This document shows, one piece after another, positions 21,004-42,449 of a stretch of 64,000 bases of DNA. The first letter of the stretch is position 1. Every line of letters begins with the position of its first letter. The notes beneath the pieces were generated by a model. That model saw only the letters and a list, made by a program, of their open reading frames with translations. It did not search any database and was not told the DNA's origin. A program made the position numbers and the translations under genes. The DNA lies in the IMG/VR virus record IMGVR_UViG_3300018891_000001, positions 124,001 through 188,000 of that record; one strand, written 5' to 3'.

Positions 21004-21683
21004 CTCGATATTGATTACTCATATGATGGAGCACGATGGGTACAAATGTACTTAAAAGAAAAATACGGGCATGATAAAGTTGCACAAATTGGAACCAAAG
21101 GAACGTTAGCAGCAAGAGCCGTCATCCGTCGTGTCGGAAAAACATTAGGATTAGAAAACGCCACAGTGGATGCTTTTGCAAAATCGATTCCTTCCCGTCC
21201 TGGTATTACATTAAATGAGGCTTATGCTGAAGAACCAATGGTACAGCAATATGCACAAACTTATCCGCAGTGGTGGGAAGCGGCAAAAGCATTAGAAGGT
21301 CATATTAGTCAAGTCGGAGTTCATGCCGGAGGAATTGTCTTATCTCCTGTTCCTCTCACCAAAGTCACTCCACTTCGCTTGGATAGTGAAGGACTTGAAA
21401 CAACCCAATATGATATGAAGTGGATTGAAAAATTCCTCGTCAAATTTGATATTTTAAAACTCGATACGCTGGACTTGATTAAAAAGACGATGGAGTTTGC
21501 AGGTATTTGGGGAACGATGGATCCGTATCGAGATATTGATGTTAATGATCCAAACATCTATAAAAATGTGTATAATCAACTCAATTTATCTGGTATCTTC
21601 CAGTGTGAATCCGATCTGTTTCGAAAAATTATTAATGATATGAAACCCAACTCTTTTGCTGATATTTCGGTTATTGTTGCCCT
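21004..21683 (+). CDS. dnaE: DNA polymerase III alpha, exon 2
   Basis: LDIDYS, VAQIGT, GVHAGGIVLS, LVKFDILKL, GIFQCES. Confidence 0.9.
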
Positions 21684-23091
21684 TAACTAATCCGGTCAAT
21701 CGGGGGCAACATTAAAAAAGCGGGTTATATGCTGGAACACCCTAAAGCCTACGGTACGCATAGCGTAACAATCCGTATGGATGTAACAATGGGCAACCAG
21801 CAGGGAAGGGTAGCTCGAAACCCACCCTCAGAGACTGGGAGAATATCTCCGCTTATGGAAGGTAACGACCATAAGCAACCCCGCTAGGATTGCTGTGAAG
21901 CAAACCGAATGATACAGTCCGACCTCTAGTGAAAGCTAGAGAGCTAGGCAGAAATGACCTAGCCATTATGACAAACAGGTTGACAACATATGAATTAATT
22001 CAAGGCGCTTATAAGGAGTCCAATATGGAATAGCAAGGTATTTGTAACCATGTTGCAGCAACAATTCCTTTTTAATCTGATCACGTTGTTGAATTTTTAA
22101 CAAGTCATCTTCACCGTTAGGATGATATTTCTCATACAAGTGGTAATGTTGCTCACCATGGTATTCAACACAAAGCTTATATTCTTCATAAAAAGCATCC
22201 ACATAAAGATGTTTACCAGTTGCAGAATTAATCAAGAAATCAAAAGTCTTTTCAGTAACCATTGGTGTATCTAAAATAGATGAAATCATTTTAAAGTAAT
22301 ATTGAGCAGTTCGATTTTCCTTTGTATAGTTTGCAGGAACACCGGCAAGCTCACACGCTTTGACAAATCCGAATCGGCGTTTATAAGTTTCACTAGAAAA
22401 CTTCGATTCAGCATCCACTAATGATTGAGATACAAAACCAAAATCGTTGTAAAGATTTCTTAATTCTTGCAGCAATTCCTCATCTGGTATGTTTTGTGGA
22501 TTTGCAATTGAACAACCTGCTTTTTCAAAAGCATTGTTCCATGATTTGAATAAACGATAAATAACATTTTGCGAATATTTACCTTGCTTTAAATAAAGCT
22601 CCTTAGTAATGCGACCATTAGTTTGAAAGACTGATTGAATATCAGCAATTACTTCATCTTCTGTGTAAATCGTTTTTTTACAAGCACTTGCAGGATTTTG
22701 TTGATCACTAATTGGAACACCGGCTTCACTATAAGCTAAATACACAGAAGCAAATTCTCTTTTAAAAGTATCGTATTTCCATTTTCCATAAGTATTAATA
22801 ATAGCTTGAGTGACCTTGCCATGTTCCTTATATAATCGTTGAATTTCAGTAATCAATGATTCACGAGTAGGTTTAATATCTTCTCCTGTAAGAGCTTTAG
22901 TAAAATGAGAAATGCCACCAAACTTTTTAAGTTGATAATACGTGTAACGAGAATGATTCATATAAATCTGTTTGGTGACTTTCCCGTATTCTTTGTAAAG
23001 TCTTTCAAAATCATTTAATAATTGCTCATATGTTACGTCCATATATAATTCCTCCTTAAAAGAACCTGTTTGTTATATTGTAACATAAAAG
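21684..23091 (+). mobile_element. Group I intron 2 in dnaE, with antisense HEG
   Basis: P1 gttgccct/ggggcaac with U.G; P10 atcg/cggt; tatatgctggaac, aaccagcagg, ctcagagact, aatgatacagtcc; terminal G 23091; removal restores AL|GRPGP. Confidence 0.9.
21966..23042 (-). CDS. Putative homing endonuclease: helical repeats plus Vsr/DUF559-like PD-(D/E)XK domain, antisense to its intron
   Basis: Repeated E....I..L....GK.T....Y units; LYVDAFYEEYKLCVEYHGEQHY...RDQIKKE; RBS aaggagg. Confidence 0.75.
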   Translation of the reverse strand: MDVTYEQLLNDFERLYKEYGKVTKQIYMNHSRYTYYQLKKFGGISHFTKALTGEDIKPTRESLITEIQRLYKEHGKVTQAIINTYGKWKYDTFKREFASVYLAYSEAGVPISDQQNPASACKKTIYTEDEVIADIQSVFQTNGRITKELYLKQGKYSQNVIYRLFKSWNNAFEKAGCSIANPQNIPDEELLQELRNLYNDFGFVSQSLVDAESKFSSETYKRRFGFVKACELAGVPANYTKENRTAQYYFKMISSILDTPMVTEKTFDFLINSATGKHLYVDAFYEEYKLCVEYHGEQHYHLYEKYHPNGEDDLLKIQQRDQIKKELLLQHGYKYLAIPYWTPYKRLELIHMLSTCLS

Positions 23092-24451
23092 CGGTAGACC
23101 AGGACCTTTAGATCTAATTCCTACATATGTTGCTCGCAAATGGGGAAGAGAAAAAGTCACTTATCCATTTCTAGAGTTAGCACCAGTACTTGAAGAAACA
23201 TATGGAGTTTGGGTATATCAGGAGCAGCTTATGAGAGCTTCACAGATTTTAGGTGGACTGACACTAGGACAAGCTGACATGATTCGTAAGGGAGTTGCTA
23301 AGAAAAAATTTGATTTAATGAACCGATGGATTGATCTCATGATTTACGGCAGCGAGGAGTATAAACGTCGTCATGCTCAATTAGTCAATCAATATCCGTT
23401 AGATGCGGAAGGAAAATCCACCGTACCACTTAACGAAGAAGGAAAACCTGCCTTATGGGTCGATTATGAGTACGAGCAAGTTCCTGATGTAGAAGGGGCC
23501 ATTGCTCGTGGATTTGATGAACCAACCTTGCTCAAAATTAAAGCCGACTGGATTAAGTTCGGTAATTACTGTTTCAATAAAGCCCACTCAGCGGCATATG
23601 CCTTTTTATCATGCATTACCGCATGGTTAAAATGCTACTATCCTGTTGAATTTATGGCTGCTTTATTAACCATGGCAGAAGGAAAGAAAGATAAAAACGG
23701 AAATCCAAAAACCATTCACTACATGAAAGAATGTGAAGAAATGGGAATCCGTATTTTGTCTCCTGATATTAATCAATCCATGTCTGGCTGGACTCCAATT
23801 TCCTATAATGAGATCCAATACGATAATCAGAATCGACCATGTATCGGTGAAATTCGCTATGGTCTAGCAAGTATTGGCGGTGTAAGTGAAGAATCTGTTG
23901 TAGAAATTATTTTGCGTCGTTCGTATTCTTCCTTAGAAGATTTTATTGCCAAAGTCAACAGCACAAAAGTGAATAAAACCAAAGTAATAGCCTTAATTAA
24001 AGCGGGTTGTTTTGATTCCTTCACTCCTAATCGTAATCTTCTTCTTCGTAACTATTATCGATCCCGTGGTGAAGAGTATGAGCATATCCCAACAACTACA
24101 AACAAAGCTACTATTCTTTCTTACGAGCGAGAAGTTTTCGGGACAGCCATTAGTATTCGTTCTCGATGGGAAAAAATCGAAGAAGGAGCTCAAACTCAAC
24201 TCACCGGTCATATTAATGAAATCGAATCCTGGAGAGCGAAAACAGGAAAAACCCATTTTACATTGGTGGTTGAAACACAGGAAGAACCAATCTTCGTTAC
24301 GGTATGGGGTTATTTAATGGAAAAATATAAAAATGAACTTCAAATTGGAAACAAAGTCACCATTAAAGGGGAAAAATCGAAAAACAAGCTGATTGCAAAA
24401 ACCGTCCAACAACACGCCAATATGTATGAAGTAGATTTGCCTTCAGCATAG
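23092..24451 (+). CDS. dnaE: DNA polymerase III alpha, exon 3
   Basis: GRPGP, YGVWVYQEQLM, YCFNKAHSAAY, YYPVEFMAALL, OB fold at the C-terminus. Confidence 0.9.
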
Positions 24452-25797: not shown

Positions 25798-26877
25798 ATG
25801 GGTTTTCAAATGAAATACCAAATTCAAAAACAATATCTTACTGCACCAAGTAAACGTCGCCCGGGAGTAGCAGTACCAGAAGTTCGATTTATTGTTGCGC
25901 ACGACACCGGAAATCCGGGATCAACAGCAAAAGGAAATATTGGCTATTATGAACGCACTCACAACAGCATAAGTGCATCCGCTCATATCTTTGTTGATGA
26001 CAAAGAAATTATCGAATGTATTCCTTTCCTTACGGGGAAACCGGAGAAGGCATGGCATGTGCTCTATAATGTAACAACCGATAATCAAATGTATGGAGAA
26101 GATGCCAATGATGTAGCACTAGGTGTAGAGCTTTGTTGGGGTCCTGGCATTAACTCTGAGGAAGCTTATAAACGTTACATCTGGGTATTAGCCTATGCTT
26201 GTTATAAGTTTCAATTAGATCCAACAAAAGCCATTGTTGGTCATGACGTACTGGATCCGGGTAGAAAGATTGACCCATCTAATGCACTAAAATATATGGG
26301 CAAAACGTATCAGCAATTCCTAAAAGATGTAGTAAATGAGTATAACCGTTGTGTTGAGAAAACAGTCATCCAACCAGCTAAACCCCTTCAGGAAGATACG
26401 TATACCATTCAACCCGGGGATACATTCTGGAATATTGCTCAACGCATGAAAGATATTACAGTACAAGATTTAATTCGATGGAATCCAACTATTGATCCGT
26501 CTAATTTACAAGTAGGACAAGTCATTTCCCTAAAGCCACCAAAAGAAAAAACGACGAAATCTACAACAAAAACGGATTCAAAAACCAATTCCAAGAAAAC
26601 AGAAACTAAGAAAAATGAAACAAAAAAGAAAATCACACTCCCAAATAAAACCTTAAAACGAGGAGATCGTGGTAACGATGTACTAGCTGTCCAAAAAGCA
26701 TTAGCTTCTCTTTCTTTCTATCCAGATAAAAATGCACCGAACTACGGGTGTGACGGCATATATGGTCCAAAAACAGAAAATGCTGTTTCCCGATTCCAAT
26801 CTGTATACGTTGGAGATGTAGACGGCATTTACGGACCAAAAACAAAAGCAGCTTTAGAGAAGTTGCTCAATAAATAA
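25798..26877 (+). CDS. Endolysin: Amidase_2 + LysM + PG-binding domain
   Basis: IVAHDTGN, SAHIFVD, IVGH...KIDP; YTIQPGDTFWNIA; DGIYGPKT twice. Confidence 0.9.
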   Translation: MGFQMKYQIQKQYLTAPSKRRPGVAVPEVRFIVAHDTGNPGSTAKGNIGYYERTHNSISASAHIFVDDKEIIECIPFLTGKPEKAWHVLYNVTTDNQMYGEDANDVALGVELCWGPGINSEEAYKRYIWVLAYACYKFQLDPTKAIVGHDVLDPGRKIDPSNALKYMGKTYQQFLKDVVNEYNRCVEKTVIQPAKPLQEDTYTIQPGDTFWNIAQRMKDITVQDLIRWNPTIDPSNLQVGQVISLKPPKEKTTKSTTKTDSKTNSKKTETKKNETKKKITLPNKTLKRGDRGNDVLAVQKALASLSFYPDKNAPNYGCDGIYGPKTENAVSRFQSVYVGDVDGIYGPKTKAALEKLLNK

Positions 26878-29447: not shown

Positions 29448-29657
29448 ATGAAAATAATGAAGCATTTTAAACAGCATCGTAAACATTACCTTATAATGGA
29501 ATTGACCTTTTTTCTCTTCATGATTATTCTAGAGTGGTATCGGCAACAAGAGTACACACTGGTCGCATGGATATGTAGCGTCATTGGAATATTATGCTTA
29601 CTGGATTTGGCCTTACTATATTGGTTATATCCTTGCAAAGAAAATAAGGATAATTAA
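29448..29657 (+). CDS. Hypothetical membrane protein
   Basis: Two TM segments; RBS gaggag. Confidence 0.6.
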   Translation: MKIMKHFKQHRKHYLIMELTFFLFMIILEWYRQQEYTLVAWICSVIGILCLLDLALLYWLYPCKENKDN

Positions 29658-29695
29658 GAAACCCCCCACCTTAATTGGTAGGGGGTTTCTTTTTT
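29656..29695 (+). terminator. Rho-independent terminator
   Basis: aagaaacccccc...gggggtttctttttt. Confidence 0.8.
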
Positions 29696-29717: not shown

Positions 29718-29876
29718 TCACAATATATTATATTTATCTAATTTTTCCAATATGTCAATAACATCTTCTTTTTTTATCCCTATTTCTTCTAATTCTTCAA
29801 ATAAAAGTGGGTCACAAGTCTCCAGTTTTTGTTTCCACTCAGGTTCTGGCGTAAACAGCCATGATGAGAAACCCAT
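29718..29876 (-). CDS. Small hypothetical protein
   Basis: RBS ggaggtg before ATG 29876. Confidence 0.55.
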   Translation of the reverse strand: MGFSSWLFTPEPEWKQKLETCDPLLFEELEEIGIKKEDVIDILEKLDKYNIL

Positions 29877-29977
29877 AAAAGTTTCACCTCCATTGTCATA
29901 AGACGGGCTACACCTCTCTATATATATAATACACAACTGTAATGCATTTCATACGACAAAAACGGAGGAATACAAAA

Positions 29978-30127
29978 ATGGAAGGCATCGTTCTCTTGGT
30001 AGGTCAGATTGGTGTTGTTTTAGCTGGTTTTATAGGCACAGCTTCCGCCATCAGCTGGTATCACAACGTAGGAGGGAAGAAAAATGACAGATCTAGTAGT
30101 CCGTTGTCAAGCAAGAACGTACGATAA
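29978..30127 (+). CDS. Small single-TM protein
   Basis: RBS ggagg; first gene after TATAAT (29925-29930) and operator-like site 29939-29950. Confidence 0.6.
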   Translation: MEGIVLLVGQIGVVLAGFIGTASAISWYHNVGGKKNDRSSSPLSSKNVR

Positions 30128-30635
30128 TCGACTGATTCAAGTTGTTGTATCAGAATCAAAGAAATCTGCAACCATCGATAAGGATGATTATTATACACCT
30201 TTTATTCAAGCAGCGGCAAAGGAGGTGAAACAGTACCCCCTCATTACGCAAAGAAAAATATTTCAACTATTGACAGCCGCACAAATCGGACTCAGTTCTC
30301 TCGTTGTTACCACCGAAGCCCACGCCGAGGAGAGAATCCAATTTCCGATTCTCGAGAAGGCATACGAATTAGATATTCTTCCAAGCGAGATTGTGAATCT
30401 TCTTATTCAGATGATTATCGGGTGCGGGATTCTCGCAGTCGCTTTCGCCATGCTATGCTTCATGATCGCAGGAACGTATGCCATGATCGGACAAGTGGAC
30501 AAAGCACGAACATGGTCTGTCAACATCATCAAAGGACTCGGGCAAGTATTAGTGGGTCCAGCCATTATTCTACTGTTAACAACTTTAGCCGGACTCATAT
30601 TCCGCAATGTTCCCGGCTTAGACATCTTCTTTTAA
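30084..30635 (+). CDS. Membrane protein with VirB2/TrbC pilin-like C-terminal hairpin
   Basis: AxA signal-like TTEAHA followed by two TM helices linked by GQVDKARTW. Confidence 0.55.
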   Translation: MTDLVVRCQARTYDNRLIQVVVSESKKSATIDKDDYYTPFIQAAAKEVKQYPLITQRKIFQLLTAAQIGLSSLVVTTEAHAEERIQFPILEKAYELDILPSEIVNLLIQMIIGCGILAVAFAMLCFMIAGTYAMIGQVDKARTWSVNIIKGLGQVLVGPAIILLLTTLAGLIFRNVPGLDIFF

Positions 30636-30637
30636 GA

Positions 30638-31672
30638 GTGGGAGTACCGTTTTCTGTCTTATCTCTAAATGCCGTTCCACAAACTGCATCGGCACATACA
30701 TGGTTCAATCCTATTCATTTTATTCCGGGAGCTGAAGAAACACTAAACAAATGGGACATCATCGCCAACCATGTTGTGAATGTCATTGAATGGTTCAAAC
30801 ATTTCCGTGAAAATATCTTACAAGTTTCAGTGGATTTCATGACATGGAGTTTTGAAGCAATTACAAACGTGGTCTTGTTTACACCTGTTATCTTTTTTAA
30901 ATCAGAGTGGTTTTCCAATAACATTCTTATGTTTACTGGACTGTCAGTGGCAATGTCATCTGTTCTTACCATGTTTGAGGGCATAAAACGAATCCTAAAC
31001 AAAAATCACACCAAAATGGATCGCATCTCATGGCGATTTCCACTTGTAATTTTAGGAGCCGGACTTGCACCTTTAGGATTTCAAACCATCTTTTCGATCT
31101 TAAATGAATTGACAGAAATGATTATCAGCATCACCAGAGCCCAAATGAATGAGGGTTTAAAATCAATGGAATTTAGTGAAGCTGCCTTTTATGAGTTTCT
31201 TGCTTTTATTGGTTTTGATATTGCTTTAATTGGTATGATGATTCCTATTTTTCTGCAAAACTTTCGACGGTGGTTTGATATTTTAGCATTAGGGGCTATA
31301 ACTCCAATTGCACTATCTTGTTGGATGTTTAAATCTTATGAGCATTATTTTCGCATATGGTGGGAGCATTTAAAAAAATGTTCACTTGTTCAATTAGTGT
31401 ATGCGGTTTTTCTTTTACTTATTGGAGGGTTAATGTTTGGAGCTAAGCCGCCCGATGATGAAGGAGAACTTTTGATTAAAATGGGAATTGTCATAGGAGG
31501 ATTATGGCGCATGAGCCAACCACCTGCCATTTTACGCCGCTACTTGGATACAGGAACGGACATTAAAGGAATGTGGAAAGGAGCTGGAGATGCTATCACA
31601 CCACATCCACTTCTACGAAAAGGATTCCAATTATTTAAAAAATCATCTACTTCAAGAGGAGGCACAAAATAG
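30638..31672 (+). CDS. Polytopic membrane protein, VirB6/TrbL-like
   Basis: 5-6 TM segments; ALGAITPIALSCW...YFRIWW...SLVQLVYAVFL; start uncertain (GTG 30638; reading frame open from 30422). Confidence 0.55.
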   Translation: MGVPFSVLSLNAVPQTASAHTWFNPIHFIPGAEETLNKWDIIANHVVNVIEWFKHFRENILQVSVDFMTWSFEAITNVVLFTPVIFFKSEWFSNNILMFTGLSVAMSSVLTMFEGIKRILNKNHTKMDRISWRFPLVILGAGLAPLGFQTIFSILNELTEMIISITRAQMNEGLKSMEFSEAAFYEFLAFIGFDIALIGMMIPIFLQNFRRWFDILALGAITPIALSCWMFKSYEHYFRIWWEHLKKCSLVQLVYAVFLLLIGGLMFGAKPPDDEGELLIKMGIVIGGLWRMSQPPAILRRYLDTGTDIKGMWKGAGDAITPHPLLRKGFQLFKKSSTSRGGTK

Positions 31673-31673
31673 A

Positions 31674-31790
31674 ATGGAAGTATTATTAGTGGCTGGAACC
31701 ATTATGATTATGACCAACACTATGGTGCTGTTAATGTTAGCACCTACTATTTTAAAAGAGGTGAAGCATGGTGCCACTCGGAAATTTTAA
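31674..31790 (+). CDS. Small hydrophobic peptide
   Basis: RBS ggagg; MEVLLVAGTIMIMTNTMVLLML. Confidence 0.5.
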   Translation: MEVLLVAGTIMIMTNTMVLLMLAPTILKEVKHGATRKF

Positions 31791-34074
31791 ACGACTCTTT
31801 CAACCTAGTTTAATTCAAAACGAAAAAGACGTATCTTATCATTTGCCTTCTTTATCACGAGCAGAAGCAAAAGCCCTTCTCTCCGCTCCCTTAGCGGGGG
31901 GAGGGGTCTTTGGCCTAGAAGCCCACCAAACAAAAGACCATGAAAGTCTTATTTTTTTTGCTCCGCCTTACTATAAAGTGGAATGGAACCTCGCAGACCG
32001 AGACGCTGTTTTTGAAAATCTTGAAACCTATAAAAAACAAATCACCATCATGCAACTATATACGAGTAAATCCTCATTGTTTCCTCTCTCCATTGAATAT
32101 ACTCAGTCTTTTTGGGAACAGGTTCGGCAATTTGCAGCTGATGATATCGGAATTATTTATCAAATTGTACTTGCATACCGACAAGACCGATGGAAAGAAC
32201 GAATCAAGGAGCAATATCAACTGTATCTAAGTGGAATCCAATCTCCCGCTGATCAAAAATGGGTACGCAGTATTCAAAATCGAATTAATCACTCCTTAGA
32301 TCATCTCTTGCAATGGGAGTTCAAATATGCCCCTATTCCTGAAGTGGAACAGAAACTAAAAGAAAATGGATTTCGATATAGTATTCGGCTCATTCTTTAT
32401 GGCGGTAATCGAGCGAGGCGAAGAAAACTAATACATGAAATACAACAAATTTTACGAACCATGGAGTATATCAATGAATGGAAAGTGAATACCTTTTTTG
32501 CGTTTGACGATATTATTCAGAATATCCAAAAACGCAAGCTCGATAATGTAGGAAAGCAACAAGTCTTATGTGTATCCGAATTGCTGCCATTTCTGATGTC
32601 CGAACATGTAGTGTACATTGAAAAACCGGCCATAAAAAAGGTAACAAAAACAAAGGTAAAAAATCCATTCGATCTCCTGCCGATAGGCAAGAAAATTCAA
32701 CAAGTCGATGGGAGTCAAATAGCTCAAAAATTTGTTTACGCTCTCCAAGAGTTAAAGGTAATTAAAGAAGAAATTGTTGCTAAACGAGTTCAATGTGGGC
32801 CAATCATGATGAAAATCACCTTTGATTTACCGAAGGGGATGCGTCTTTCGGATATAACAAAGAAAAATATGATTGAGGATATTCAGACTCATATGGGAGT
32901 CAAACATCTACAGATCTTACAAGGGGAGGATACGGGAGAATTCGATATTATGTTGCCACAAGAAAAAAGGCAAAAAATCTTTTTACGAGATTATGTGGAT
33001 ACCTCTGAATTTATGGAGTTTGCCGGACAACATCCACTTCCATTCTTTGTAGGGGTGGACGAAATAGGACGCTCCATTTTTCGTTGTCTAAGTGAAATTC
33101 GTCATATTCTTGTAGCAGGAACAACCGGATCCGGCAAAAGCGTGTGGATGAATCAACTTATTCTTACCTTGTTATTAATTCGCAAACCCGATGAACTTCA
33201 ATTTTATATGATTGATCTAAAACAAGTGGAACTCACCTGCTTTCAAGATTTCCCTCATGTGCGAGAAGTCATCACAGATGCGAACAAAGCTATTCACCTA
33301 CTTAGGAAAATCCAAAAAGAGATGGACAGACGTTATCAATTATTTAGTGAAACAGGAGTAAAAAACATTGCCTTGTATAATAGAAAACATCCTCATCAAA
33401 AGCTCCCTTATATTGTGTGCATTATTGATGAATATGCGGAATTAGCATTACGAACGGATAGTATACATGAACTCGTTCAAAGTATGGCACAACTCGCAAG
33501 GGCTGCTGGCATCCACTTGATTATTGCAACCCAAGATCCACGAGTTGAAGTAATCCCAGGAATTATTAAGTCCAACATGCCGGGGAAAATCGGTTTCCGT
33601 TGCTCTAATGGAAACAGTTATCTAACATTTTTAAATACGAAACCACCTTTTAACCTATTAGGAAACGGGGATGGGGTCATGAGCTTTGAGGGGCAAATAG
33701 AGGAGCATATTCGCTTTCAGGGATGTCTGATTATCGATGATCCCAAAAACGAAGGGCTTGAAAGTCAGTTGATTGCACAAATCGCAAGTCATATGGACGA
33801 CTATGAAGGAGTAGATTTACCAGAATTAGAGGAAACAGAAGAAGTGCATATAGAAGAAACAGAGACAGAAATAGACCGACTTAAACGCATTATTGCTCAA
33901 ACAGGGGAAACAAGGGTATCACAACTAAGGGAAATGATGAAAATTAACATCAATCGATTGAATGATTTGATGAGGGAACTCGCAGAAGAAGGGTGGCTGC
34001 AAAAGCCAGAATCCAAACAGCAAGGATACCAATTAATTGCACCAGAAGAGGAATTGGAAAAGTGGAGACAATAA
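31768..34074 (+). CDS. FtsK/SpoIIIE-family DNA translocase
   Basis: HILVAGTTGSGKS, IDLKQVEL, IIDEYAE, ARAAGIHLIIATQ, LLGNGDG; C-terminal winged helix. Confidence 0.9.
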   Translation: MVPLGNFKRLFQPSLIQNEKDVSYHLPSLSRAEAKALLSAPLAGGGVFGLEAHQTKDHESLIFFAPPYYKVEWNLADRDAVFENLETYKKQITIMQLYTSKSSLFPLSIEYTQSFWEQVRQFAADDIGIIYQIVLAYRQDRWKERIKEQYQLYLSGIQSPADQKWVRSIQNRINHSLDHLLQWEFKYAPIPEVEQKLKENGFRYSIRLILYGGNRARRRKLIHEIQQILRTMEYINEWKVNTFFAFDDIIQNIQKRKLDNVGKQQVLCVSELLPFLMSEHVVYIEKPAIKKVTKTKVKNPFDLLPIGKKIQQVDGSQIAQKFVYALQELKVIKEEIVAKRVQCGPIMMKITFDLPKGMRLSDITKKNMIEDIQTHMGVKHLQILQGEDTGEFDIMLPQEKRQKIFLRDYVDTSEFMEFAGQHPLPFFVGVDEIGRSIFRCLSEIRHILVAGTTGSGKSVWMNQLILTLLLIRKPDELQFYMIDLKQVELTCFQDFPHVREVITDANKAIHLLRKIQKEMDRRYQLFSETGVKNIALYNRKHPHQKLPYIVCIIDEYAELALRTDSIHELVQSMAQLARAAGIHLIIATQDPRVEVIPGIIKSNMPGKIGFRCSNGNSYLTFLNTKPPFNLLGNGDGVMSFEGQIEEHIRFQGCLIIDDPKNEGLESQLIAQIASHMDDYEGVDLPELEETEEVHIEETETEIDRLKRIIAQTGETRVSQLREMMKININRLNDLMRELAEEGWLQKPESKQQGYQLIAPEEELEKWRQ

Positions 34075-34288
34075 TCTCCACTTTTTTGTGGTATTTTACA
34101 GAATAGCAAAACTATGATACTATGAAAAGAGAGAGAAAAAACAAAATTCTACAAAAATAGACAGGAAAAAACCCTTTACTTAGGGGGTAAAGGGTTCGAA
34201 AGGTAATATGCGCATATACAATATTCAACTATCTTTATTATAATGCGTATTCCTTTCCCTGTCAAAAAGGAAAGGAGATTTTTTTCGA

Positions 34289-34840
34289 ATGGAACACGAA
34301 AAACTGAATATCTTTGATCCGAATGTCATTTACTACGTGCAACTGCCAACAGGAAAGACTCGGAGATTGAGTGAAGAAGAACTAGAAAAAATAACACTCA
34401 ATTCCCCCAACAACATTCCTGAGTTAAACGGTAAAAAGACATGGATCAGTAACTACGTTGCTACGTTCTGGATGCCGTTTATGAAGCCAGGGCCATTTGC
34501 GGTTTACGTTCAATTGCAGAAAATGGCATATGGGGATAAAGATCATGCATTTCCATCTGTTCCGTATTTAGCCATGATTCTGGGTATTAGTGAACGAACT
34601 GTACAAAATTACATTGATCATTTGGTGGATCTGGGATTCGTAATTGTATTAGAACGGTTTGAAGCACAAAGCAACCGGCAGCTAAGTAATTTATATTTGC
34701 TATCAACAACGACTCCGTTTCTTCCTAGGGAGAAGTATGAGAAGTTGCCGAAGAAGTTACAAAGAGAACATGACCGATTTATGGATTACATAAAGTTTAA
34801 AAAGATTTTACACGAAGAACGAATTCCTGACTATGAGTGA
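34289..34840 (+). CDS. Replication initiator-like winged-HTH protein
   Basis: FAVYVQLQKMAY...AFPSVPYLAMILGISERTVQNYIDHLVDLGFV; directly upstream of the iteron array. Confidence 0.7.
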   Translation: MEHEKLNIFDPNVIYYVQLPTGKTRRLSEEELEKITLNSPNNIPELNGKKTWISNYVATFWMPFMKPGPFAVYVQLQKMAYGDKDHAFPSVPYLAMILGISERTVQNYIDHLVDLGFVIVLERFEAQSNRQLSNLYLLSTTTPFLPREKYEKLPKKLQREHDRFMDYIKFKKILHEERIPDYE

Positions 34841-34841
34841 T

Positions 34842-34868
34842 TAGCCCGCATTAGCGGGCTATTTTTTT
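34842..34868 (+). terminator. Rho-independent terminator
   Basis: tagcccgc-atta-gcgggcta-ttttttt. Confidence 0.85.
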
Positions 34869-34878
34869 ATGCTATTTT

Positions 34879-35121
34879 CTATCCACAAAAATCTGTGGAT
34901 ATGTGTATAAAAGGGGATGAAAATTTTACAGGGGGGAAACCGGGTGAAAAAATTGCAGGGGGATATCTAGGGGGTGAAAATTTTACAGGGGGATATTTAG
35001 GGGGTGAAAAATTTGCAGGGGGATTTATACACAAGAGGGGAGGGTGAAAATTTTACGGGGGTGTAATTTTTTCAGGGAAAGGATGAAAAATCTGCGGGGA
35101 ACGACTGAAAAATCTGCATCC
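34879..35121. repeat. Putative replication origin: about 8 iterons plus DnaA boxes
   Basis: 20-bp units GG[GA]TGAAAAWWTT[AG]CAGGGG at 34915, 34942, 34972, 35002, 35042, degenerate at 35059, 35081, 35103; DnaA boxes 34879, 34894 (1 mismatch each), 34902, 35025 (perfect). Confidence 0.8.
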
Positions 35122-35327
35122 GAATAAATACTAAGAAGAAGAAAGTCAATTTGAAGAAGTTTTTTAATGAATATCCCTTGTCTACCTTTTCTCTGATAAA
35201 AGACATTGCAGTTAGAACTATGTTCTAAATGCACAGTCGAAATGAGAGTGCAAGGGAAATTCATAAGAAGAAGAAATGGAGACAAAAAAAGCAAATGCGA
35301 CAATGCATCTGCTTCGTGATTGGATAC

Positions 35328-35552
35328 TTATTTTTTTAACATGAATCGTGGAATGGCATAGAAAAGAGCTGAAAGGGCTAAACCGACCAAAAAACTACCT
35401 AATGTAGCATTCGGATCAAAAAATGAACCAATGGCTGAGCACAAAAACATAGTGCCCAGAATATTTGGAATCAAACCTTTCCACCCATGCATCATATGTA
35501 ACTTCCAAAAAGCTATGACTAAGATAAAGAATAAAATTGTGCTGAGACTCAT
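35328..35552 (-). CDS. Small membrane protein
   Basis: Three hydrophobic segments; RBS gaggag. Confidence 0.65.
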   Translation of the reverse strand: MSLSTILFFILVIAFWKLHMMHGWKGLIPNILGTMFLCSAIGSFFDPNATLGSFLVGLALSALFYAIPRFMLKK

Positions 35553-35709
35553 CTTATTCCTCCTACTAAATCAAGTAAAAAGAAGACCTATGCCTTAAAA
35601 GCAAAGGTCTCAAAGTTTGGTGAATACAAAGTTATAAAATAACTAGGTTGGAAGATAATAAAAGAGACAGCATCATTATATCCAATCCTAAGCGATTCGT
35701 CTAGAAAAA

Positions 35710-37002
35710 TTAGAACAGCGAAAATTCCATTTGCCCTTCAATTACTTTACGACTTTTGAATTCTGCCATTTTGAGTTCCACCTCATACACTGCTGTTTCG
35801 CATACATGATGAGACGAAATACGATAAGAGGCTAATCGCTGCTGTCGTTCTTCTAAAAATTTTTGATTGCTTTCTACAAGCTGACGAATGATTTCAGCTT
35901 CAGAGCGACTTAATTTCGCATTAAACGGTGGATTGGTTGTAATACATTCAAACTTGATCTCTCTAGCATGGGCTTTTATAATTTGAATTTTTCGATCATC
36001 CGAAAGAGAATTCCACGGTTGATGCAAATCCTCCTCATATTGAAAAATCTCACGTTTTCGCAAATCTACTGGATGAACAAAAATATCTATTTGTTTACTT
36101 TCTTCTTCGAAAATCCGGATAGGTGCTCGGTATTCTCCCAATAGTGAATTTCCCCAATAAATACGAGTATCCGTATTAAACTCAAAATATCGGTGAATGG
36201 TTTTTGTTTCTGGGTTAATATGCAATCCCATAATCGGTTTTGGCACATATAAAAGAGAAGGCAAAAATAAAAAGGCTTGAATACAAGCCACTTTTACCAT
36301 CGTTAAACTTAAATCAGCACCTACTAAATTTAAGCAATTGGATGGCAGCACCATAGCAGCACCACCAATACAAGGTTCAAACTGACTATCCGTAGGAGAA
36401 GAATTTAGCATCATATTGATAGCTTCTGTTACTTGAATAGGAGTTGGAAAATAATCCAAATGTCCCTTTTGGCCATGTTCAGCCACAAAAGTAGACAATA
36501 CATCCGTGGGCTCTAAAAATAATAAATCCAAACTGAATTCCCGATACAACTCTTCCCAAAGAGAATCTGGAATCGAAGGACGTTTGCAATAGCTAATGCC
36601 TAATGCATAACCAATCCATTCAATAAAATCCGTAATCCGATATCCCCGATGATATACTCGATCCATGCATTTGGTTAACATTTTATAAGCAGGAGTATTC
36701 ATGATGGGCGAAGACCGAACCGGATTTTTCGGCATATCTCCATCTTGGTAAGATCCTTTGGCCAAGATAGAAAGCCACGCATACCAACGACCATACAGCA
36801 TGGTTTCAATCATCAAGCCCATTCCACGCATCCAGCCAAACCGGTACGAATCTTTCACATCTTGGGGTGGTTCTGTCCAAAGAGGAGAGTATTGAAGTTC
36901 TAATAATTTTCGTTGAATCTCCAGCCATTGTTCTGGGGAAAGGGAAGCACAGAACTCTTGGCCACGACGTTCCGATTCCAATCGACCATATGATTTTTTC
37001 AT
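35710..37002 (-). CDS. Orphan N6-adenine DNA methyltransferase-like protein
   Basis: DYFPTP, FEPCIGGAAM, GADLS, ITTNPPF. Confidence 0.7.
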   Translation of the reverse strand: MKKSYGRLESERRGQEFCASLSPEQWLEIQRKLLELQYSPLWTEPPQDVKDSYRFGWMRGMGLMIETMLYGRWYAWLSILAKGSYQDGDMPKNPVRSSPIMNTPAYKMLTKCMDRVYHRGYRITDFIEWIGYALGISYCKRPSIPDSLWEELYREFSLDLLFLEPTDVLSTFVAEHGQKGHLDYFPTPIQVTEAINMMLNSSPTDSQFEPCIGGAAMVLPSNCLNLVGADLSLTMVKVACIQAFLFLPSLLYVPKPIMGLHINPETKTIHRYFEFNTDTRIYWGNSLLGEYRAPIRIFEEESKQIDIFVHPVDLRKREIFQYEEDLHQPWNSLSDDRKIQIIKAHAREIKFECITTNPPFNAKLSRSEAEIIRQLVESNQKFLEERQQRLASYRISSHHVCETAVYEVELKMAEFKSRKVIEGQMEFSLF

Positions 37003-37354: not shown

Positions 37355-37558
37355 TTAATTAGCTTTCACCAATTCATACTCATCTTTATTTAATACTATG
37401 TCACCGCCAAATGATTCTTCATAAACCGTAACCGATTGATCTTCTTTATCATAGTATTTTACTTCATAGATCTTTCCGATTAAATGTTCAATCGACAATT
37501 GTGCGACAGCAATACGTTGTGTGTCAGGTTTACTTGCGATGACTCTAACCTTCATCAT
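37355..37558 (-). CDS. Hypothetical protein
   Basis: RBS ggag; overlaps the doc stop. Confidence 0.6.
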   Translation of the reverse strand: MMKVRVIASKPDTQRIAVAQLSIEHLIGKIYEVKYYDKEDQSVTVYEESFGGDIVLNKDEYELVKAN

Positions 37559-38145
37559 TTTACTCCTTTATCCTTTTTGTATCCTTTTTGCATATCGTCC
37601 AATAATTTTTGGAGTTCTTTTCGTTCTTCCATTTCTTTTTCTGTTAAAATTTCCTGAATCTCTAATTCATTTAACAAGTCTATGTATTCTTTATACAATG
37701 GTATCAAGGTTTCCTTGCTTGGTTCCATTCCTTCTATATATTGAGATTCAGGAACGCTGTTTCTTTCTAACCAATCAGCCAATTTTTCCAGACTCCACTT
37801 TTTATTTGCAACCAATTTTGAAACAAAGTATAATTCCCAATCTGATATTACGACCACATATCCGTTAAATTCCAAAAAAGTGGCTGCAGTAATATATGCT
37901 GTACGTTTGTTTCCATCCACAAAGTACTGACTTGTGGCTAGAGTATGCATATATACTGCAGCTTTGGTAAATAAACCTGGATATGGTTCATACGTATGCC
38001 CACCAAAATCATAAGTTTGAAACGGTTTATATGCCAGACTATCAATAAGACCTGGTTCATACTCACCAGGCAACCCACCAAACTCTTGTAGAGCCATGTC
38101 ATGAAACATTCGAATATGTTTGGGCTCTAAAGATTCAATGTTCAA
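37555..38145 (-). CDS. doc: Doc/Fic-family toxin (His-to-Gln motif variant)
   Basis: EFGGLPG, LFTKAAVY, SQYFVDGNKRTA. Confidence 0.85.
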   Translation of the reverse strand: MNIESLEPKHIRMFHDMALQEFGGLPGEYEPGLIDSLAYKPFQTYDFGGHTYEPYPGLFTKAAVYMHTLATSQYFVDGNKRTAYITAATFLEFNGYVVVISDWELYFVSKLVANKKWSLEKLADWLERNSVPESQYIEGMEPSKETLIPLYKEYIDLLNELEIQEILTEKEMEERKELQKLLDDMQKGYKKDKGVK

Positions 38146-42199: not shown

Positions 42200-42229
42200 G
42201 TATAATTTTGTTTTACTTAGGGAAAAGTA
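42200..42229 (+). promoter_or_regulatory. Forespore sigmaF-like promoter
   Basis: GTATA-15-GGGAAAAGTA, matching GYATA-N15-GGnnAnAnTA. Confidence 0.65.
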
Positions 42230-42263
42230 AAACCAATCCTTATATATAAAGGTGGTGAAAGAA

Positions 42264-42449
42264 ATGTCACGCAATACAAATCAAATTCTCGTACCTACAG
42301 CTCAACAAGCATTAGAGCAAATGAAGTATGAAATTGCTCAAGAGTTTGGTGTTCAACTTGGAGCAGATGTCACTTCTCGCATCAATGGTTCTGTCGGCGG
42401 CGAAATCACTAAGCGTTTGGTGGCTTTAGCGCAAAGTCAATTGCGCTAA
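42264..42449 (+). CDS. ssp: Alpha/beta-type small acid-soluble spore protein
   Basis: [49 protein letters not shown]. Confidence 0.95.

What the first reader, a model, noticed from the sequence alone, without database searches (positions are those of the whole stretch)
29925..34074. Minimal pilin-like + VirB6-like + FtsK module next to the origin: candidate new DNA transfer or segregation system
Seen: one operon behind an operator-bearing promoter, encoding a small TM peptide, a pilin-like two-TM protein, a polytopic VirB6-like protein, a hydrophobic peptide and a 768-aa FtsK/SpoIIIE ATPase with a C-terminal winged helix. It lies immediately upstream of rep and the iterons. No relaxase, VirB4 or VirD4 is recognisable in the window. 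Established: Streptomyces TraB moves dsDNA with an FtsK motor alone, and SpoIIIE pumps DNA into the forespore. Inference: a relaxase-free dsDNA translocation channel for cell-to-cell spread, or for delivering the element into the forespore. The sigmaF-driven ssp gene fits the second option. The G-rich polar repeats at the origin could also orient the motor.
Basis: partly seen in the sequence, partly recalled or inferred. Interest (0 to 1): 0.7.

Follow-up and report, generated by a model that had tools for sequence, protein, structure and literature searches.

The report
Phage T4SS-like FtsK DNA-pump cassette
A tight five-gene operon in a 216-kb jumbo phage of a spore-forming host joins a pilin-like and a VirB6-like membrane protein to a soluble ATPase that fuses a VirB4-type docking domain to an FtsK DNA motor; more than 150 Bacillus phages share the cassette, its function is untested, and it most likely pumps double-stranded phage DNA across a membrane.

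Summary
The replicon is not a plasmid. It is a complete 215,870-bp myovirus genome with portal, tail sheath and its own replisome.

- The 344-aa polytopic protein is VirB6/TrbL-like. Homologues hit Pfam TrbL_4, and R388 VirB6 is the top fold match.
- The 183-aa protein looks like a VirB2-type pilin, on weak evidence.
- The first 280 residues of the "FtsK" have the fold of the VirB4 N-terminal domain (Z 15). An FtsK motor and a gamma-like winged helix follow. There is no membrane anchor.

No relaxase, VirB4 ATPase domain or VirD4 was found anywhere in the genome.

The gene order is conserved in all 20 related loci examined: Herelleviridae such as Goe3, sister jumbo phages, and SPbeta-like prophages. 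All hosts are Bacillus-type. The rep gene and iterons are a separate unit and are absent from one sister phage that keeps the cassette.

The FtsK gene is already annotated in many Bacillus phages with function unknown. I found no paper describing its T4SS-like partners.

Best reading: a relaxase-free dsDNA conduit, perhaps loading phage DNA into forespores. Function is inferred, not shown.

The parts
29656..29691 (.). Terminator-like hairpin closing the upstream unit; left boundary of the cassette
   Evidence: 15-pair stem with 8 G-C pairs and a T-run, readable on both strands
29718..29876 (-). Small acidic ORF (52 aa from the ATG behind a GGAGGTG ribosome-binding site), transcribed away from the cassette; possible regulator
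   Evidence: A minus-strand ORF of 49-52 aa sits at the same position in sister contigs L030 and L032. No family match
29925..29957 (+). Control region: TATAAT-like box, palindrome TGTAATGCATTTCA (29938-29951) and a CATAC box (29950-29954)
   Evidence: The palindrome was found. The block is conserved in L030 and L032. An ATACA-type box lies just upstream of the ribosome-binding site in most other lineages. Function not shown
29978..30127 (+). g1: 49-aa single-helix membrane peptide
   Evidence: Ribosome-binding site GGAGG and one hydrophobic stretch at residues 1-26. Detectable in 10 of 18 related loci. Weak DUF7394 hit, 24.9 bits, below cut-off
30084..30635 (+). g2: 183-aa VirB2/T4SS-pilin-like protein, with a long leader, a conserved A-x-A site, and a mature part of about 100 aa carrying two hydrophobic helices
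   Evidence: phrog_3528 at 1.4e-18. Alignment A4 shows the conserved AHA site and hairpin. 6 of 26 homologues hit T4SS_pilin and 2 of 26 hit TrbC/VirB2, all weakly. Language-model neighbours include T4SS_pilin and TrbC clusters
30638..31672 (+). g3: 344-aa polytopic VirB6/TrbL-like membrane protein
   Evidence: phrog_3750 at 2.8e-75. 7 of 34 homologues hit Pfam TrbL_4, best 2e-9 and above cut-off, and 1 hits TrbL. For the AF2 model (pLDDT 73.8), the top PDB matches are R388 TrwI/VirB6 by Foldseek and by VIA-align (Z 9.3). AFDB clusters are named TrbL/VirB6
31674..31790 (+). g4: 38-aa hydrophobic peptide
   Evidence: Ribosome-binding site GAGGAGG. A near-identical 38-aa ORF is present in L032. 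Similar 34-44-aa ORFs with an 'NTxM' motif occur in 8 of 18 loci, including Goe3 gp132. It is absent where g3 abuts FtsK
31822..32607 (+). g5 residues 19-280: domain with the VirB4 N-terminal-domain fold (DUF8128-type)
   Evidence: AF2 model with pLDDT 84 and pTM 0.82. VIA-align top hit is TrwK/VirB4 7o42_A at Z 15.0, rmsd 3.0, 221 residues, chain 37-399; the next hit is Z 9.2. The Foldseek top 7 are all R388 T4SS entries with TrwK/VirB4. AFDB and Atlas matches are N-terminal parts of DUF87-, TraG- and TrwB-type ATPases. Distant sequence relatives carry those ATPase domains
31768..34074 (+). g5: 768-aa soluble hybrid ATPase, made of a VirB4-like N-domain, FtsK alpha/beta motor and gamma-like winged helix (about 33868-34017)
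   Evidence: PF01580 at 1.2e-42 and phrog_3551 at 9e-169. PDB FtsK 2ius at 6e-56, against TcpA at 3e-21. Walker A and B are intact, but the family's ATQRP motif reads ATQDPR. FtsK_gamma is sub-threshold. No TM segment
34055..34088 (+). Terminator-like hairpin ending the cassette
   Evidence: 14-pair stem followed by a T-run
34289..35099 (+). Neighbour, not part of the cassette: rep-like HTH_36 gene (34289-34840) and seven iterons (34915-35099)
   Evidence: The same seven repeats, with almost the same spacing, sit next to the HTH_36 gene in L032. Both are absent in L030, which keeps the cassette
42264..42449 (+). Context: alpha/beta-type small acid-soluble spore protein gene
   Evidence: PF00269 at 6.3e-23. 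Sequence and upstream GTATA-N15-GGGAAAAGTA

Best explanation
The region is a self-contained five-gene phage cassette. It builds a stripped-down membrane DNA translocon derived from type IV secretion.

Proposed parts:
- g3 (VirB6/TrbL-like) forms the channel in the cytoplasmic membrane.
- g2 (VirB2-type pilin-like) is processed at its A-x-A site and forms the extracytoplasmic conduit or lining.
- g1 and g4 are single-helix adaptors, possibly in the role of VirB3.
- g5 is a soluble hexameric motor. Its VirB4-type N-terminal domain docks it under the channel. Its FtsK alpha/beta ATPase pumps double-stranded DNA. Its gamma-like winged helix selects or orients the DNA.

No relaxase is involved. The substrate is therefore dsDNA, presumably the phage genome.

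The most likely use is to move phage DNA across the sporulation septum from mother cell to forespore, so that the virus survives inside the spore.

Basis for each step:
- Shown: gene order, its conservation, and the domain and fold assignments.
- Inferred: assembly, dsDNA substrate and direction.
- Speculative: the forespore destination.
For: Anatomy:
- Tight operon between two terminators.
- VirB6/TrbL likeness of g3 from three independent lines: Pfam on homologues, PDB fold search by two aligners, and AFDB clusters.
- Pilin-like g2.
- VirB4 N-domain fold in g5 at Z 15, well clear of the next hit. Profile-level sequence links connect it to T4SS-type ATPases.
- The g5 motor is nearest to true FtsK. 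It has intact Walker A and B, a gamma-like C-terminus and no TM anchor, so it needs a membrane partner.

Functional unit:
- The order g2-g3-FtsK is kept in 18 of 18 loci plus 2 sister contigs across three unrelated phage lineages.
- No neighbouring gene is kept.

Relaxase-free:
- No hit in the whole genome for relaxase families, VirB4 ATPase families or VirD4.

Spore link:
- g3 homologues occur in 160 Bacillus phage records out of 162.
- Cellular copies were found only in genomes with Bacillus-type names, inside prophage-like regions.
- This phage carries an alpha/beta SASP gene.
- The sister phage has a Spo0E-like gene next to the cassette.
- Bc431v3 carries sigma-F/G homologues a few genes from its FtsK gene (PMC3601020).
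- The idea that phage segregation genes promote entrapment in spores is published (PMC10294663; PMC12991052).

Precedents for minimal relaxase-free systems:
- Ced, with VirB2-, VirB6- and VirB4-like parts (PMC11868833).
- pELF TraC/TraD/TraG (PMC13492992).
Against: - No functional datum exists for any member of the cassette.
- Complex prediction of g3 + g4 with the g5 N-domain gave no answer.
- SPO1 forms virospores yet has no FtsK-domain gene. The cassette is therefore not required for entrapment in general.
- No Clostridial phage appeared among the g3 hits. The distribution may reflect Bacillus-phage ancestry rather than sporulation.
- In this clade the Arg of the family-wide ATQRP motif is Asp or Lys. 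I recall this Arg as the arginine finger, and did not verify that. The motor may be slowed or altered.
- The pilin assignment rests on sub-threshold hits.
- No cell-wall hydrolase lies in the operon.
- Polar guiding motifs could not be tested, because gene strand and genome arm are fully confounded.
Confidence: 0.4

Rival explanations
1. Conjugation-like spread. The same translocon exports phage dsDNA through division septa or cell contacts into sister cells of a Bacillus chain or biofilm. This would resemble Streptomyces TraB/Spd intramycelial spread, and would infect neighbours without virions.
For: - The T4SS-type parts list of pilin-like, VirB6-like and VirB4-type docking domain suggests export.
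- An FtsK-type motor with a winged helix and no relaxase matches TraB logic.
- pELF shows that a minimal FtsK-type transfer unit works in Firmicutes.
- In Goe3 a metallo-endopeptidase gene lies just upstream of the cassette. In a Lysinibacillus prophage a Peptidase_M23 gene lies just downstream.
Against: - TraB equivalog score is 46 bits against a cut-off of 800.
- There is no clt-like repeat set tied to the motor. The only repeats travel with rep.
- No hydrolase lies inside the operon here.
- A virulent phage gains little from moving naked DNA into a sister cell that its own burst will reach anyway.
Confidence: 0.15
2. Entry or exclusion device. The cassette is made early. It either reels in the rest of the very long phage genome after partial ejection, or occupies or blocks the entry route to exclude superinfecting phages. 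The direction would be import, as in Ced.
For: - Ced, the closest system in parts list, imports DNA.
- Carriers have large genomes of 138-216 kb.
- The 132-kb SPO1 lacks the cassette.
- Membrane proteins plus an ATPase are a common layout for exclusion systems (general knowledge).
Against: - The position at the end of a long + strand block that contains replication genes and an endolysin (amidase) gene does not look like a first-injected early region.
- There are no PADLOC hits beyond the generic FtsK domain.
- Exclusion does not need a gamma-like DNA-reading domain.
- Timing of expression is unknown.
Confidence: 0.12
3. Intracellular genome management. g5 acts like the soluble Bacillus translocase SftA. 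It clears or segregates replicating phage DNA at division septa, or resolves and partitions a plasmid-like carrier state. The membrane proteins only tether it.
For: - g5 is soluble and closest to FtsK.
- Cellular copies sit beside actin-like ALP_N partition genes.
- Goe3 has a 'partition protein' gene upstream.
- This phage has an ALP_N gene, a rep gene with iterons, and no integrase. That fits a plasmid-like or carrier state.
Against: - This reading does not explain a VirB6-like channel, a secreted pilin-like protein or a VirB4-type docking domain.
- The ALP gene of this phage is about 130 kb away from the cassette.
Confidence: 0.12
4. Protein secretion. The cassette is a T7SS- or T4SS-like protein exporter driven by an EssC/EccC-type ATPase.
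For: EssC and EccC are the next-best ATPase families. The N-domain has a weaker fold match to an ESX-3 membrane-complex chain (Z 9.2; AFDB lists an EccE-named cluster).
Against: - There is a single P-loop domain, no FHA domain and no WXG-type substrate gene nearby.
- FtsK scores far above EssC (189 against 103 bits).
- FtsK alpha and gamma-like parts are present.
Confidence: 0.04
5. Fragment of a conventional plasmid or ICE conjugation system, with the remaining T4SS genes and relaxase elsewhere.
For: Only the T4SS-like flavour of the parts.
Against: - The genome is complete (terminal repeat, CheckV 100%) and viral.
- No relaxase, VirB4 ATPase or VirD4 was found anywhere in it.
- The cassette has the same composition in lytic Herelleviridae.
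Confidence: 0.01

Closest known systems
FtsK / SpoIIIE / SftA chromosome translocases
   Same: - Best sequence match for g5 residues 305-744: PDB 2ius at 6e-56 and NCBIfam FtsK at 189 bits.
- Walker A and B are intact.
- A gamma-like winged helix sits at the C-terminus.
- Like SftA, the protein is soluble (my knowledge of SftA; PMC9320952 abstract).
   Different: - There is no N-terminal membrane domain.
- Instead there is a 280-residue VirB4-type domain.
- It is encoded with pilin-like and VirB6-like partners.
- The ATQRP motif is altered.
- The score is far below the FtsK equivalog cut-off of 1566 bits.
Inner-membrane core of conjugative type IV secretion systems (VirB2, VirB3, VirB4, VirB6; R388 structures 7o3v, 7o41, 7o42, 8rtd)
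   Same: - g3 matches VirB6, and the g5 N-domain matches the VirB4 N-terminal domain, in the same solved machine.
- g2 has the build of a VirB2 pilin.
   Different: - The ATPase module is FtsK-type, not VirB4-type: AAA_10 scores only 13.7 bits on the P-loop and CagE_TrbE_VirB gives no hit.
- There is no VirD4, VirB8, VirB10, VirB11 or relaxase.
- It is carried by viruses.
Ced/Ted DNA-exchange systems of Crenarchaeota (CedA, CedA1, CedA2, CedB)
   Same: The minimal parts list is the same: VirB6-like polytopic protein, small two-helix VirB2-like protein or proteins, and an ATPase with a VirB4-like N-domain. It is also relaxase-free (PMC11868833).
   Different: - Ced ATPases are of the HerA/VirB4 clade, not FtsK.
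- Ced imports cellular DNA after DNA damage.
- I made no direct sequence or fold comparison with Ced proteins.
Streptomyces TraB / Spd dsDNA conjugation, and pELF TraC/TraD/TraG of Enterococcus faecium
   Same: An FtsK-family motor moves dsDNA without a nickase, together with a few integral membrane proteins (PMC13492992; TraB hit at 2.4e-12).
   Different: - TraB equivalog score is 46 bits against a cut-off of 800.
- No clt-like repeats are linked to the motor.
- pELF uses two separate ATPases, whereas here one polypeptide joins both roles.
- The host element is a virus.
Annotated 'FtsK/SpoIIIE-like protein' genes of Bacillus phages (Goe3 gp131, Grass, Bc431v3 gp098, phiAGATE and others)
   Same: They are the same family (phrog_3551 at 9e-169, 32-34% identity over 94-98% of the length). 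They have the same five-gene neighbourhood in Goe3, gp135 to gp131.
   Different: - The literature treats only the ATPase, as a curiosity of unknown role (PMC3853049, PMC3601020).
- The partner genes are labelled hypothetical or membrane proteins.
- I found no paper linking VirB6 or VirB4 to them.

Membership tests
FtsK/SpoIIIE DNA translocases | FtsK_SpoIIIE P-loop motor domain with Walker A and B | tested here: met
   PF01580 at 1.2e-42. GTTGSGKS and IIDEYAEL are conserved. PDB FtsK at 6e-56
FtsK/SpoIIIE DNA translocases | N-terminal multi-pass membrane anchor | tested here: not met
   No hydrophobic stretch in 768 aa. The N-terminus folds as a soluble alpha/beta domain
FtsK/SpoIIIE DNA translocases | Gamma domain (PF09397) that reads polar motifs | tested here: inconclusive
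   15.7 bits against a cut-off of 30.6, at the right position. Polar motifs could not be tested because strand and arm are confounded, and the B. subtilis SRS occurs only 4 times
FtsK/SpoIIIE DNA translocases | Conserved ATQRP motif (its Arg recalled as the arginine finger; that identification is unverified) | tested here: not met
   ATQDPR here and in L030, and STQKPM in L032. ATQRP, or CTQRP in one, in all 17 other homologues
FtsK/SpoIIIE DNA translocases | Reaches the curated equivalog score | tested here: not met
   NF007615 scores 189 bits against a cut-off of 1566
Conjugative type IV secretion system | VirB4-family ATPase | tested here: not met
   AAA_10 scores 13.7 bits on the P-loop only, and CagE_TrbE_VirB gives no hit. 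Only the N-terminal-domain fold is VirB4-like, at Z 15
Conjugative type IV secretion system | VirB6/TrbL polytopic channel protein | tested here: met
   TrbL_4 in 7 of 34 homologues, best 37.7 bits against a cut-off of 27. VirB6 is the top PDB fold match by two methods. The window protein itself has no direct Pfam hit
Conjugative type IV secretion system | VirB2/TrbC-type pilin | tested here: inconclusive
   The leader, A-x-A site and two-helix hairpin are conserved. T4SS_pilin hits in 6 of 26 and TrbC in 2 of 26 homologues are all sub-threshold. Atlas neighbours are leads only
Conjugative type IV secretion system | Relaxase and VirD4-type coupling protein | tested here: not met
   PF03432, PF01076, PF02486 and PF02534 gave no hit in the complete genome
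Streptomyces TraB-type dsDNA transfer | TraB equivalog, plus a clt locus of short repeats bound by its winged helix | tested here: not met
   NF041214 scores 46 bits against a cut-off of 800. The only nearby repeats co-vary with the rep gene, not with the motor
Type VII secretion EssC/EccC | Several tandem FtsK-like ATPase domains, TM helices, and N-terminal FHA or DUF domains | tested here: not met
   One P-loop domain and no TM. TIGR03928 scores 103 bits against a cut-off of 778
Ced/Ted archaeal DNA import | CedA (VirB6-like), CedA1 (VirB2-like) and CedB (HerA/VirB4 clade ATPase) | not tested
   The comparison rests on the parts list given in PMC11868833. No Ced sequences were compared here
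Phage family phrog_3551 / phrog_3750 / phrog_3528 cassette of Bacillus phages | Full-length matches to all three profiles, in the order g2-g3-FtsK | tested here: met
   E-values 9.3e-169, 2.8e-75 and 1.4e-18. Synteny with Goe3 gp135-gp131 and with 17 other loci

The most novel reading that the evidence does not exclude
Large Bacillus phages carry a virus-owned mini-conjugation machine, reduced from a type IV secretion system. A single VirB4-FtsK hybrid motor pushes the double-stranded phage genome through a VirB6/pilin conduit across the double membrane of the sporulation septum, or into neighbouring cells. That would be active, phage-driven loading of spores rather than passive entrapment.
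Probability: 0.25. Interest if true: 0.85.

Novelty: new variant of a known kind. Interest (0 to 1): 0.62.

Why it matters
- Phage 'FtsK/SpoIIIE' genes have sat in genome notes for over a decade as unexplained curiosities.
- If the gene always travels with a VirB6-like channel and a pilin-like protein, and itself carries a VirB4 docking domain, the question changes. It stops being 'why does a phage need a chromosome segregase' and becomes 'what DNA does a phage move across which membrane'.
- It would be a natural fusion of the two ATPase roles of conjugation: the membrane-docked VirB4 and the FtsK-like DNA pump. It would also be a bacterial-virus counterpart of the archaeal Ced system, which bears on how T4SS ATPases evolved.
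- It offers a concrete, genetically testable candidate mechanism for virospore formation, a phenomenon now measured in B. subtilis populations.
- Relatives occur in phages of laboratory B. subtilis strains (for example Goe3), so the tests are straightforward.

Tried and rejected
- Near-identity DNA searches of the region against phage and plasmid collections found nothing. The genome has no close sequenced isolate in those sets.
- Complex prediction of g3 + g4 with g5 residues 1-300 gave 'no answer' with a score of 0.00. This is not evidence either way.
- Polar-motif search: every skewed 7- or 8-mer follows gene strand, because each arm is transcribed in one direction. Codon and ribosome-binding-site words dominate. 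The B. subtilis SRS GAGAAGGG occurs 4 times.
- Iterons as a clt-like loading site for the motor: rejected. The seven repeats recur with almost the same spacing next to the HTH_36 gene of the sister phage. They vanish together with that gene in L030, which keeps the cassette. Goe3 has no comparable repeats near its cassette.
- Origin at the strand switch: transcription converges here and cumulative GC skew peaks here. The skew therefore gives no support for an origin. The rep-plus-iteron unit is still a plausible origin on its own.
- The sigma-A promoter scan found no convincing site directly upstream of g1.
- PADLOC gave only the generic FtsK domain of SspH and Mad8.
- NCBIfam gave no hit for g1-g4.
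- There is no sigma-70 region-2 gene and no tyrosine integrase in the genome.
- A scan of 401 Bacilli genomes found g3 relatives in only 2. The cassette is essentially viral.
- I could not confirm the sigma-E and sigma-F promoter consensus, or the arginine-finger assignment, from the paper library. Both stay marked as recalled from memory.

Full report
**What the window is.** The window is bases 124001-188000 of a single 215,870-bp contig. The contig has 37.4% G+C and a 61-bp terminal overlap. It is held as a virus record with direct terminal repeats and CheckV completeness of 100%.

It encodes a portal protein and a tail sheath (phrog_16991, 2e-263). It also encodes its own replisome: DNA polymerase III alpha, primases, helicases, a clamp-like processivity factor, ribonucleotide reductase and a thymidylate synthase. 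The sheath is only about 33% identical to those of Bacillus phage 0305phi8-36 and Moorella phage MTATph1.

The element is therefore a complete jumbo myovirus, not a plasmid. The host is not identified. All relatives of the cassette come from Bacillus-type phages and genomes, and the phage carries a spore-protein gene. The host is therefore almost certainly an endospore-forming member of the Bacillales.

**The observation.** Five + strand ORFs lie between two terminator-like hairpins at 29656-29691 and 34055-34088.
- g1: 29978-30127, 49 aa, one hydrophobic helix.
- g2: 30084-30635, 183 aa.
- g3: GTG 30638-31672, 344 aa.
- g4: 31674-31790, 38 aa.
- g5: 31768-34074, 768 aa.

Ribosome-binding sites precede g1, g2, g4 and g5. 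g3 starts two bases after the g2 stop. The g1/g2 and g4/g5 overlaps recur in the sister phages.

g5 has an FtsK_SpoIIIE domain (1.2e-42), no hydrophobic segment and a C-terminal winged helix. That winged helix matches FtsK_gamma only below threshold (15.7 bits).

The rep-like HTH_36 gene and seven roughly 20-nt direct repeats follow, after g5's own terminator.

Only the 'operator-bearing promoter' is partly verified. A 14-bp palindrome (29938-29951) and an adjacent CATAC box are conserved in two sister phages. No sigma-A consensus promoter is present.

**The cassette is widespread and syntenic.**
- g2, g3 and g5 match phage families phrog_3528, phrog_3750 and phrog_3551.
- tblastn finds g5 relatives in 368 phage records. 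Of these, 158 cover at least 80% of the query and 234 are Bacillus phages.
- g3 relatives occur in 162 records, 160 of them Bacillus phages.
- In Goe3 (Herelleviridae, Bastillevirinae), genes gp135 to gp131 have sizes 70, 183, 357, 39 and 733 aa in the same order.
- In 18 of 18 loci gathered from Goe3, bacterial genomes and IMG/VR contigs, g2, g3 and FtsK are adjacent, co-oriented and in the same order. g1 is detectable in 10 of them.
- A g4-like hydrophobic ORF of 34-44 aa is present in 8 of the 18, and is missing where g3 abuts FtsK.
- Two sister jumbo-phage contigs of about 216-217 kb carry the cassette at the same genomic position. It follows guanylate kinase and a small minus-strand ORF, at the end of the + strand block.
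- Cellular copies are rare. They were found in 2 of 401 sampled Bacilli genomes and at five loci in the species-level genome set.
- The Lysinibacillus copy abuts phage tail and holin genes. The Lysinibacillus and Neobacillus copies both lie near an actin-like ALP_N partition pair.

**What the parts are: g3.** g3 has no direct Pfam hit. However, 7 of 34 homologues hit TrbL_4, with a best score of 2e-9 and 37.7 bits against a cut-off of 27. One homologue hits TrbL/VirB6.

An AlphaFold model built on 33 homologues (pLDDT 73.8) finds R388 TrwI/VirB6 as the four best PDB matches by Foldseek (probability 1.0, TM 0.36-0.50). An exhaustive VIA-align scan also puts it first (Z 9.3, 228 residues), with Legionella DotA third. 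AlphaFold-DB clusters named TrbL/VirB6 or T4SS protein make up 13 of the top 30, from E 1.4e-5.

**What the parts are: g2.** g2 has the build of a VirB2-type pilin. It has a leader of about 80 residues ending in a basic, then hydrophobic, segment and a conserved A-H-A. The mature part is about 100 residues, with two hydrophobic helices joined by a short basic loop.

Six of 26 homologues hit T4SS_pilin and two hit TrbC/VirB2, all weakly. Language-model neighbours include those families. I treat this assignment as probable, not established.

**What the parts are: g5.** The g5 motor is closest to genuine FtsK. The PDB hit 2ius scores 6e-56 over residues 305-744. TcpA scores 3e-21 and EccC 1e-22. 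In NCBIfam, FtsK scores 189 bits, EssC 103 and TraB 46, all far below their cut-offs.

**The new point: the first 280 residues of g5.** An AlphaFold model (pLDDT 84, pTM 0.82) aligns to the N-terminal domain of TrwK/VirB4. The alignment to 7o42_A residues 37-399 gives Z 15.0 and rmsd 3.0 Å over 221 residues. The next hit is Z 9.2 and the rest are 7.3 or lower.

The seven best Foldseek PDB hits are all R388 T4SS entries that contain TrwK/VirB4; three of them are TrwK/VirB4-only assemblies. AlphaFold-DB and ESM-Atlas matches are the N-terminal parts (DUF8128) of DUF87-, TraG- and TrwB-type ATPases.

A profile of the domain finds only 146 cluster representatives among 1.84 billion proteins. Of ten weakest full-length hits scanned, six carry DUF87, T4SS-DNA_transf or TrwB_AAD_bind ATPase domains.

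g5 is thus a hybrid. It joins a VirB4-type docking domain to an FtsK motor and a gamma-like DNA reader, and it has no membrane anchor of its own.

**What is absent.** Searches of the complete genome found none of the following:
- relaxase (PF03432, PF01076, PF02486);
- VirB4 ATPase domain (PF03135 gave no hit, and PF12846 only touches the g5 P-loop at 13.7 bits);
- VirD4 (PF02534).

**Relation to rep and the iterons.** The sister phage L032 has the HTH_36 gene and seven repeats with almost the same spacing (27, 30, 30, 40, 17, then 23 against 22 here). L030 has neither, yet keeps the cassette. None of the 18 other loci has rep next to the cassette.

The repeats therefore belong to rep. The adjacency is local history, not part of the mechanism.

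Transcription converges at this point and cumulative GC skew peaks here. Skew therefore says nothing about an origin.

**How it most likely works.**
- Shown: a co-inherited operon encoding a VirB6-like channel protein, a pilin-like secreted membrane protein, one or two single-helix peptides, and a soluble ATPase that fuses a VirB4 N-domain to FtsK.
- Inferred from the solved R388 machine: there, the VirB4 N-domain sits under the inner-membrane complex next to VirB3 and VirB6. By analogy, the N-domain docks the motor under a g3 channel, with g1 and g4 as adaptors.
- Inferred from FtsK, SpoIIIE and TraB biology, and from the lack of a relaxase: the substrate is dsDNA.
- Speculative: the destination.

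I favour the forespore. The cassette is confined to phages of Bacillus-type hosts in three unrelated lineages. This phage has an alpha/beta SASP gene. Upstream of that gene is a GTATA-N15-GGGAAAAGTA element, which looks to me like a forespore sigma promoter; the consensus is recalled from memory. A Spo0E-like gene lies beside the cassette in the sister phage. Bc431v3 carries sigma-F/G homologues a few genes from its FtsK gene. Entrapment of lytic phages in spores is real and is thought to use phage-borne segregation genes.

There are real counter-points:
- SPO1 makes virospores without any FtsK-domain gene.
- No Clostridial phage carries g3.
- The jumbo-phage clade has replaced the Arg of the otherwise invariant ATQRP motif.
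- Complex prediction gave no answer.

The rival readings are export to neighbouring cells, genome entry or exclusion, septum clearing or partition, and protein secretion. They are listed with their tests in the rival-explanations section.

**Comparison with what is known.** The FtsK gene itself is already annotated in Bacillus phages and noted as unexplained (PMC3853049, PMC3601020). In the searchable literature I found nothing that links its membrane neighbours to VirB6 or VirB2, or its N-terminus to VirB4.

In parts list, the closest system is the archaeal Ced DNA importer, which has VirB2-, VirB6- and VirB4-like proteins and no relaxase (PMC11868833). In motor type, the closest are FtsK, SpoIIIE and SftA. 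In logic, the closest are Streptomyces TraB/Spd and the pELF TraC/TraD/TraG unit (PMC13492992).

It fails the membership tests for each:
- no membrane anchor, and sub-threshold scores, for FtsK;
- no VirB4 ATPase, VirD4 or relaxase for a T4SS;
- no TraB equivalog or clt locus for TraB-type transfer;
- a single P-loop domain, against what EssC requires.

It is best filed as a new variant. It is a virus-borne, T4SS-derived translocon with a hybrid VirB4-FtsK motor.

**Verdict.**
The T4SS-like, relaxase-free translocon idea is strengthened. The plasmid framing and the origin linkage are wrong.
- The cassette is not unique to this genome.
- Interest is moderate to high. The architecture is unexpected, and the function can be tested directly in B. 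subtilis phages.

Noticed in passing
window 42200-42449: A canonical alpha/beta-type small acid-soluble spore protein gene (61 aa, PF00269 6e-23) lies on the + strand inside a minus-strand block. Upstream is GTATA-N15-GGGAAAAGTA, which resembles a forespore sigma-F/G promoter; the consensus is recalled from memory.
   Followed up: partly
window 18200-24451: The DNA polymerase III alpha gene is split into three ORFs (18200-19714, 20950-21690, 23231-24451). The interruptions are a LAGLIDADG gene (19779-20717) and a minus-strand HNH-repeat endonuclease gene (21966-23042). The sister contigs L030 and L032 carry one intact gene of 1167-1168 aa.
   Followed up: partly
window 33520-33564 (g5 residues 585-599): The family-wide ATQRP motif reads ATQDPR here and in L030, and STQKPM in L032. 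All 17 other homologues keep the QRP core (ATQRP in 16, CTQRP in one). The change is a clade-specific feature, not a sequencing error. Its effect on the motor is unknown.
   Followed up: partly
window 29718-29957; L030 7109-7370; L032 7038-7320: A conserved small acidic ORF is transcribed away from the cassette. The intergenic block is conserved and contains a TGWAAT-NN-ATTTCA palindrome. An ATACA-type box lies just upstream of the first ribosome-binding site in most lineages (Goe3, Lysinibacillus-type, jumbo clade). It resembles the -10 of mother-cell sigma-E promoters as I recall them.
   Followed up: partly
L032 6641-6808: The sister jumbo phage encodes a Spo0E-like protein (PF09388) between guanylate kinase and the cassette. 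The window has an unrelated 69-aa membrane ORF (29448-29657) at about that position.
   Followed up: no
window 34915-35099 and about 35000-36000: Seven iterons sit exactly where + strand and minus-strand transcription converge and where cumulative GC skew peaks. This is an unusual place for a replication origin.
   Followed up: partly
window 37555-38145 (-): A Fic/DOC-family gene (2e-12). The sister phage has Fic next to a MazE-like antitoxin gene, suggesting a toxin-antitoxin or host-modifying module.
   Followed up: no
genome 23975-25162 (outside the window): An actin-like ALP_N protein gene (3e-22) lies near the other strand-switch point. In bacterial prophage copies and in Goe3, an ALP or partition gene lies right beside the cassette. 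No tyrosine integrase is present in the genome.
   Followed up: partly
window 25798-26877: An endolysin-type gene (Amidase_2 + LysM + PG_binding_1) lies 3 kb upstream of the cassette, inside the replication-gene block. This position is conserved in the sister phages.
   Followed up: no
window 35710-37002 (-): A 430-aa ORF has only a faint N6-adenine methyltransferase motif match (E 8e-4, below cut-off). Otherwise it has no family.
   Followed up: no
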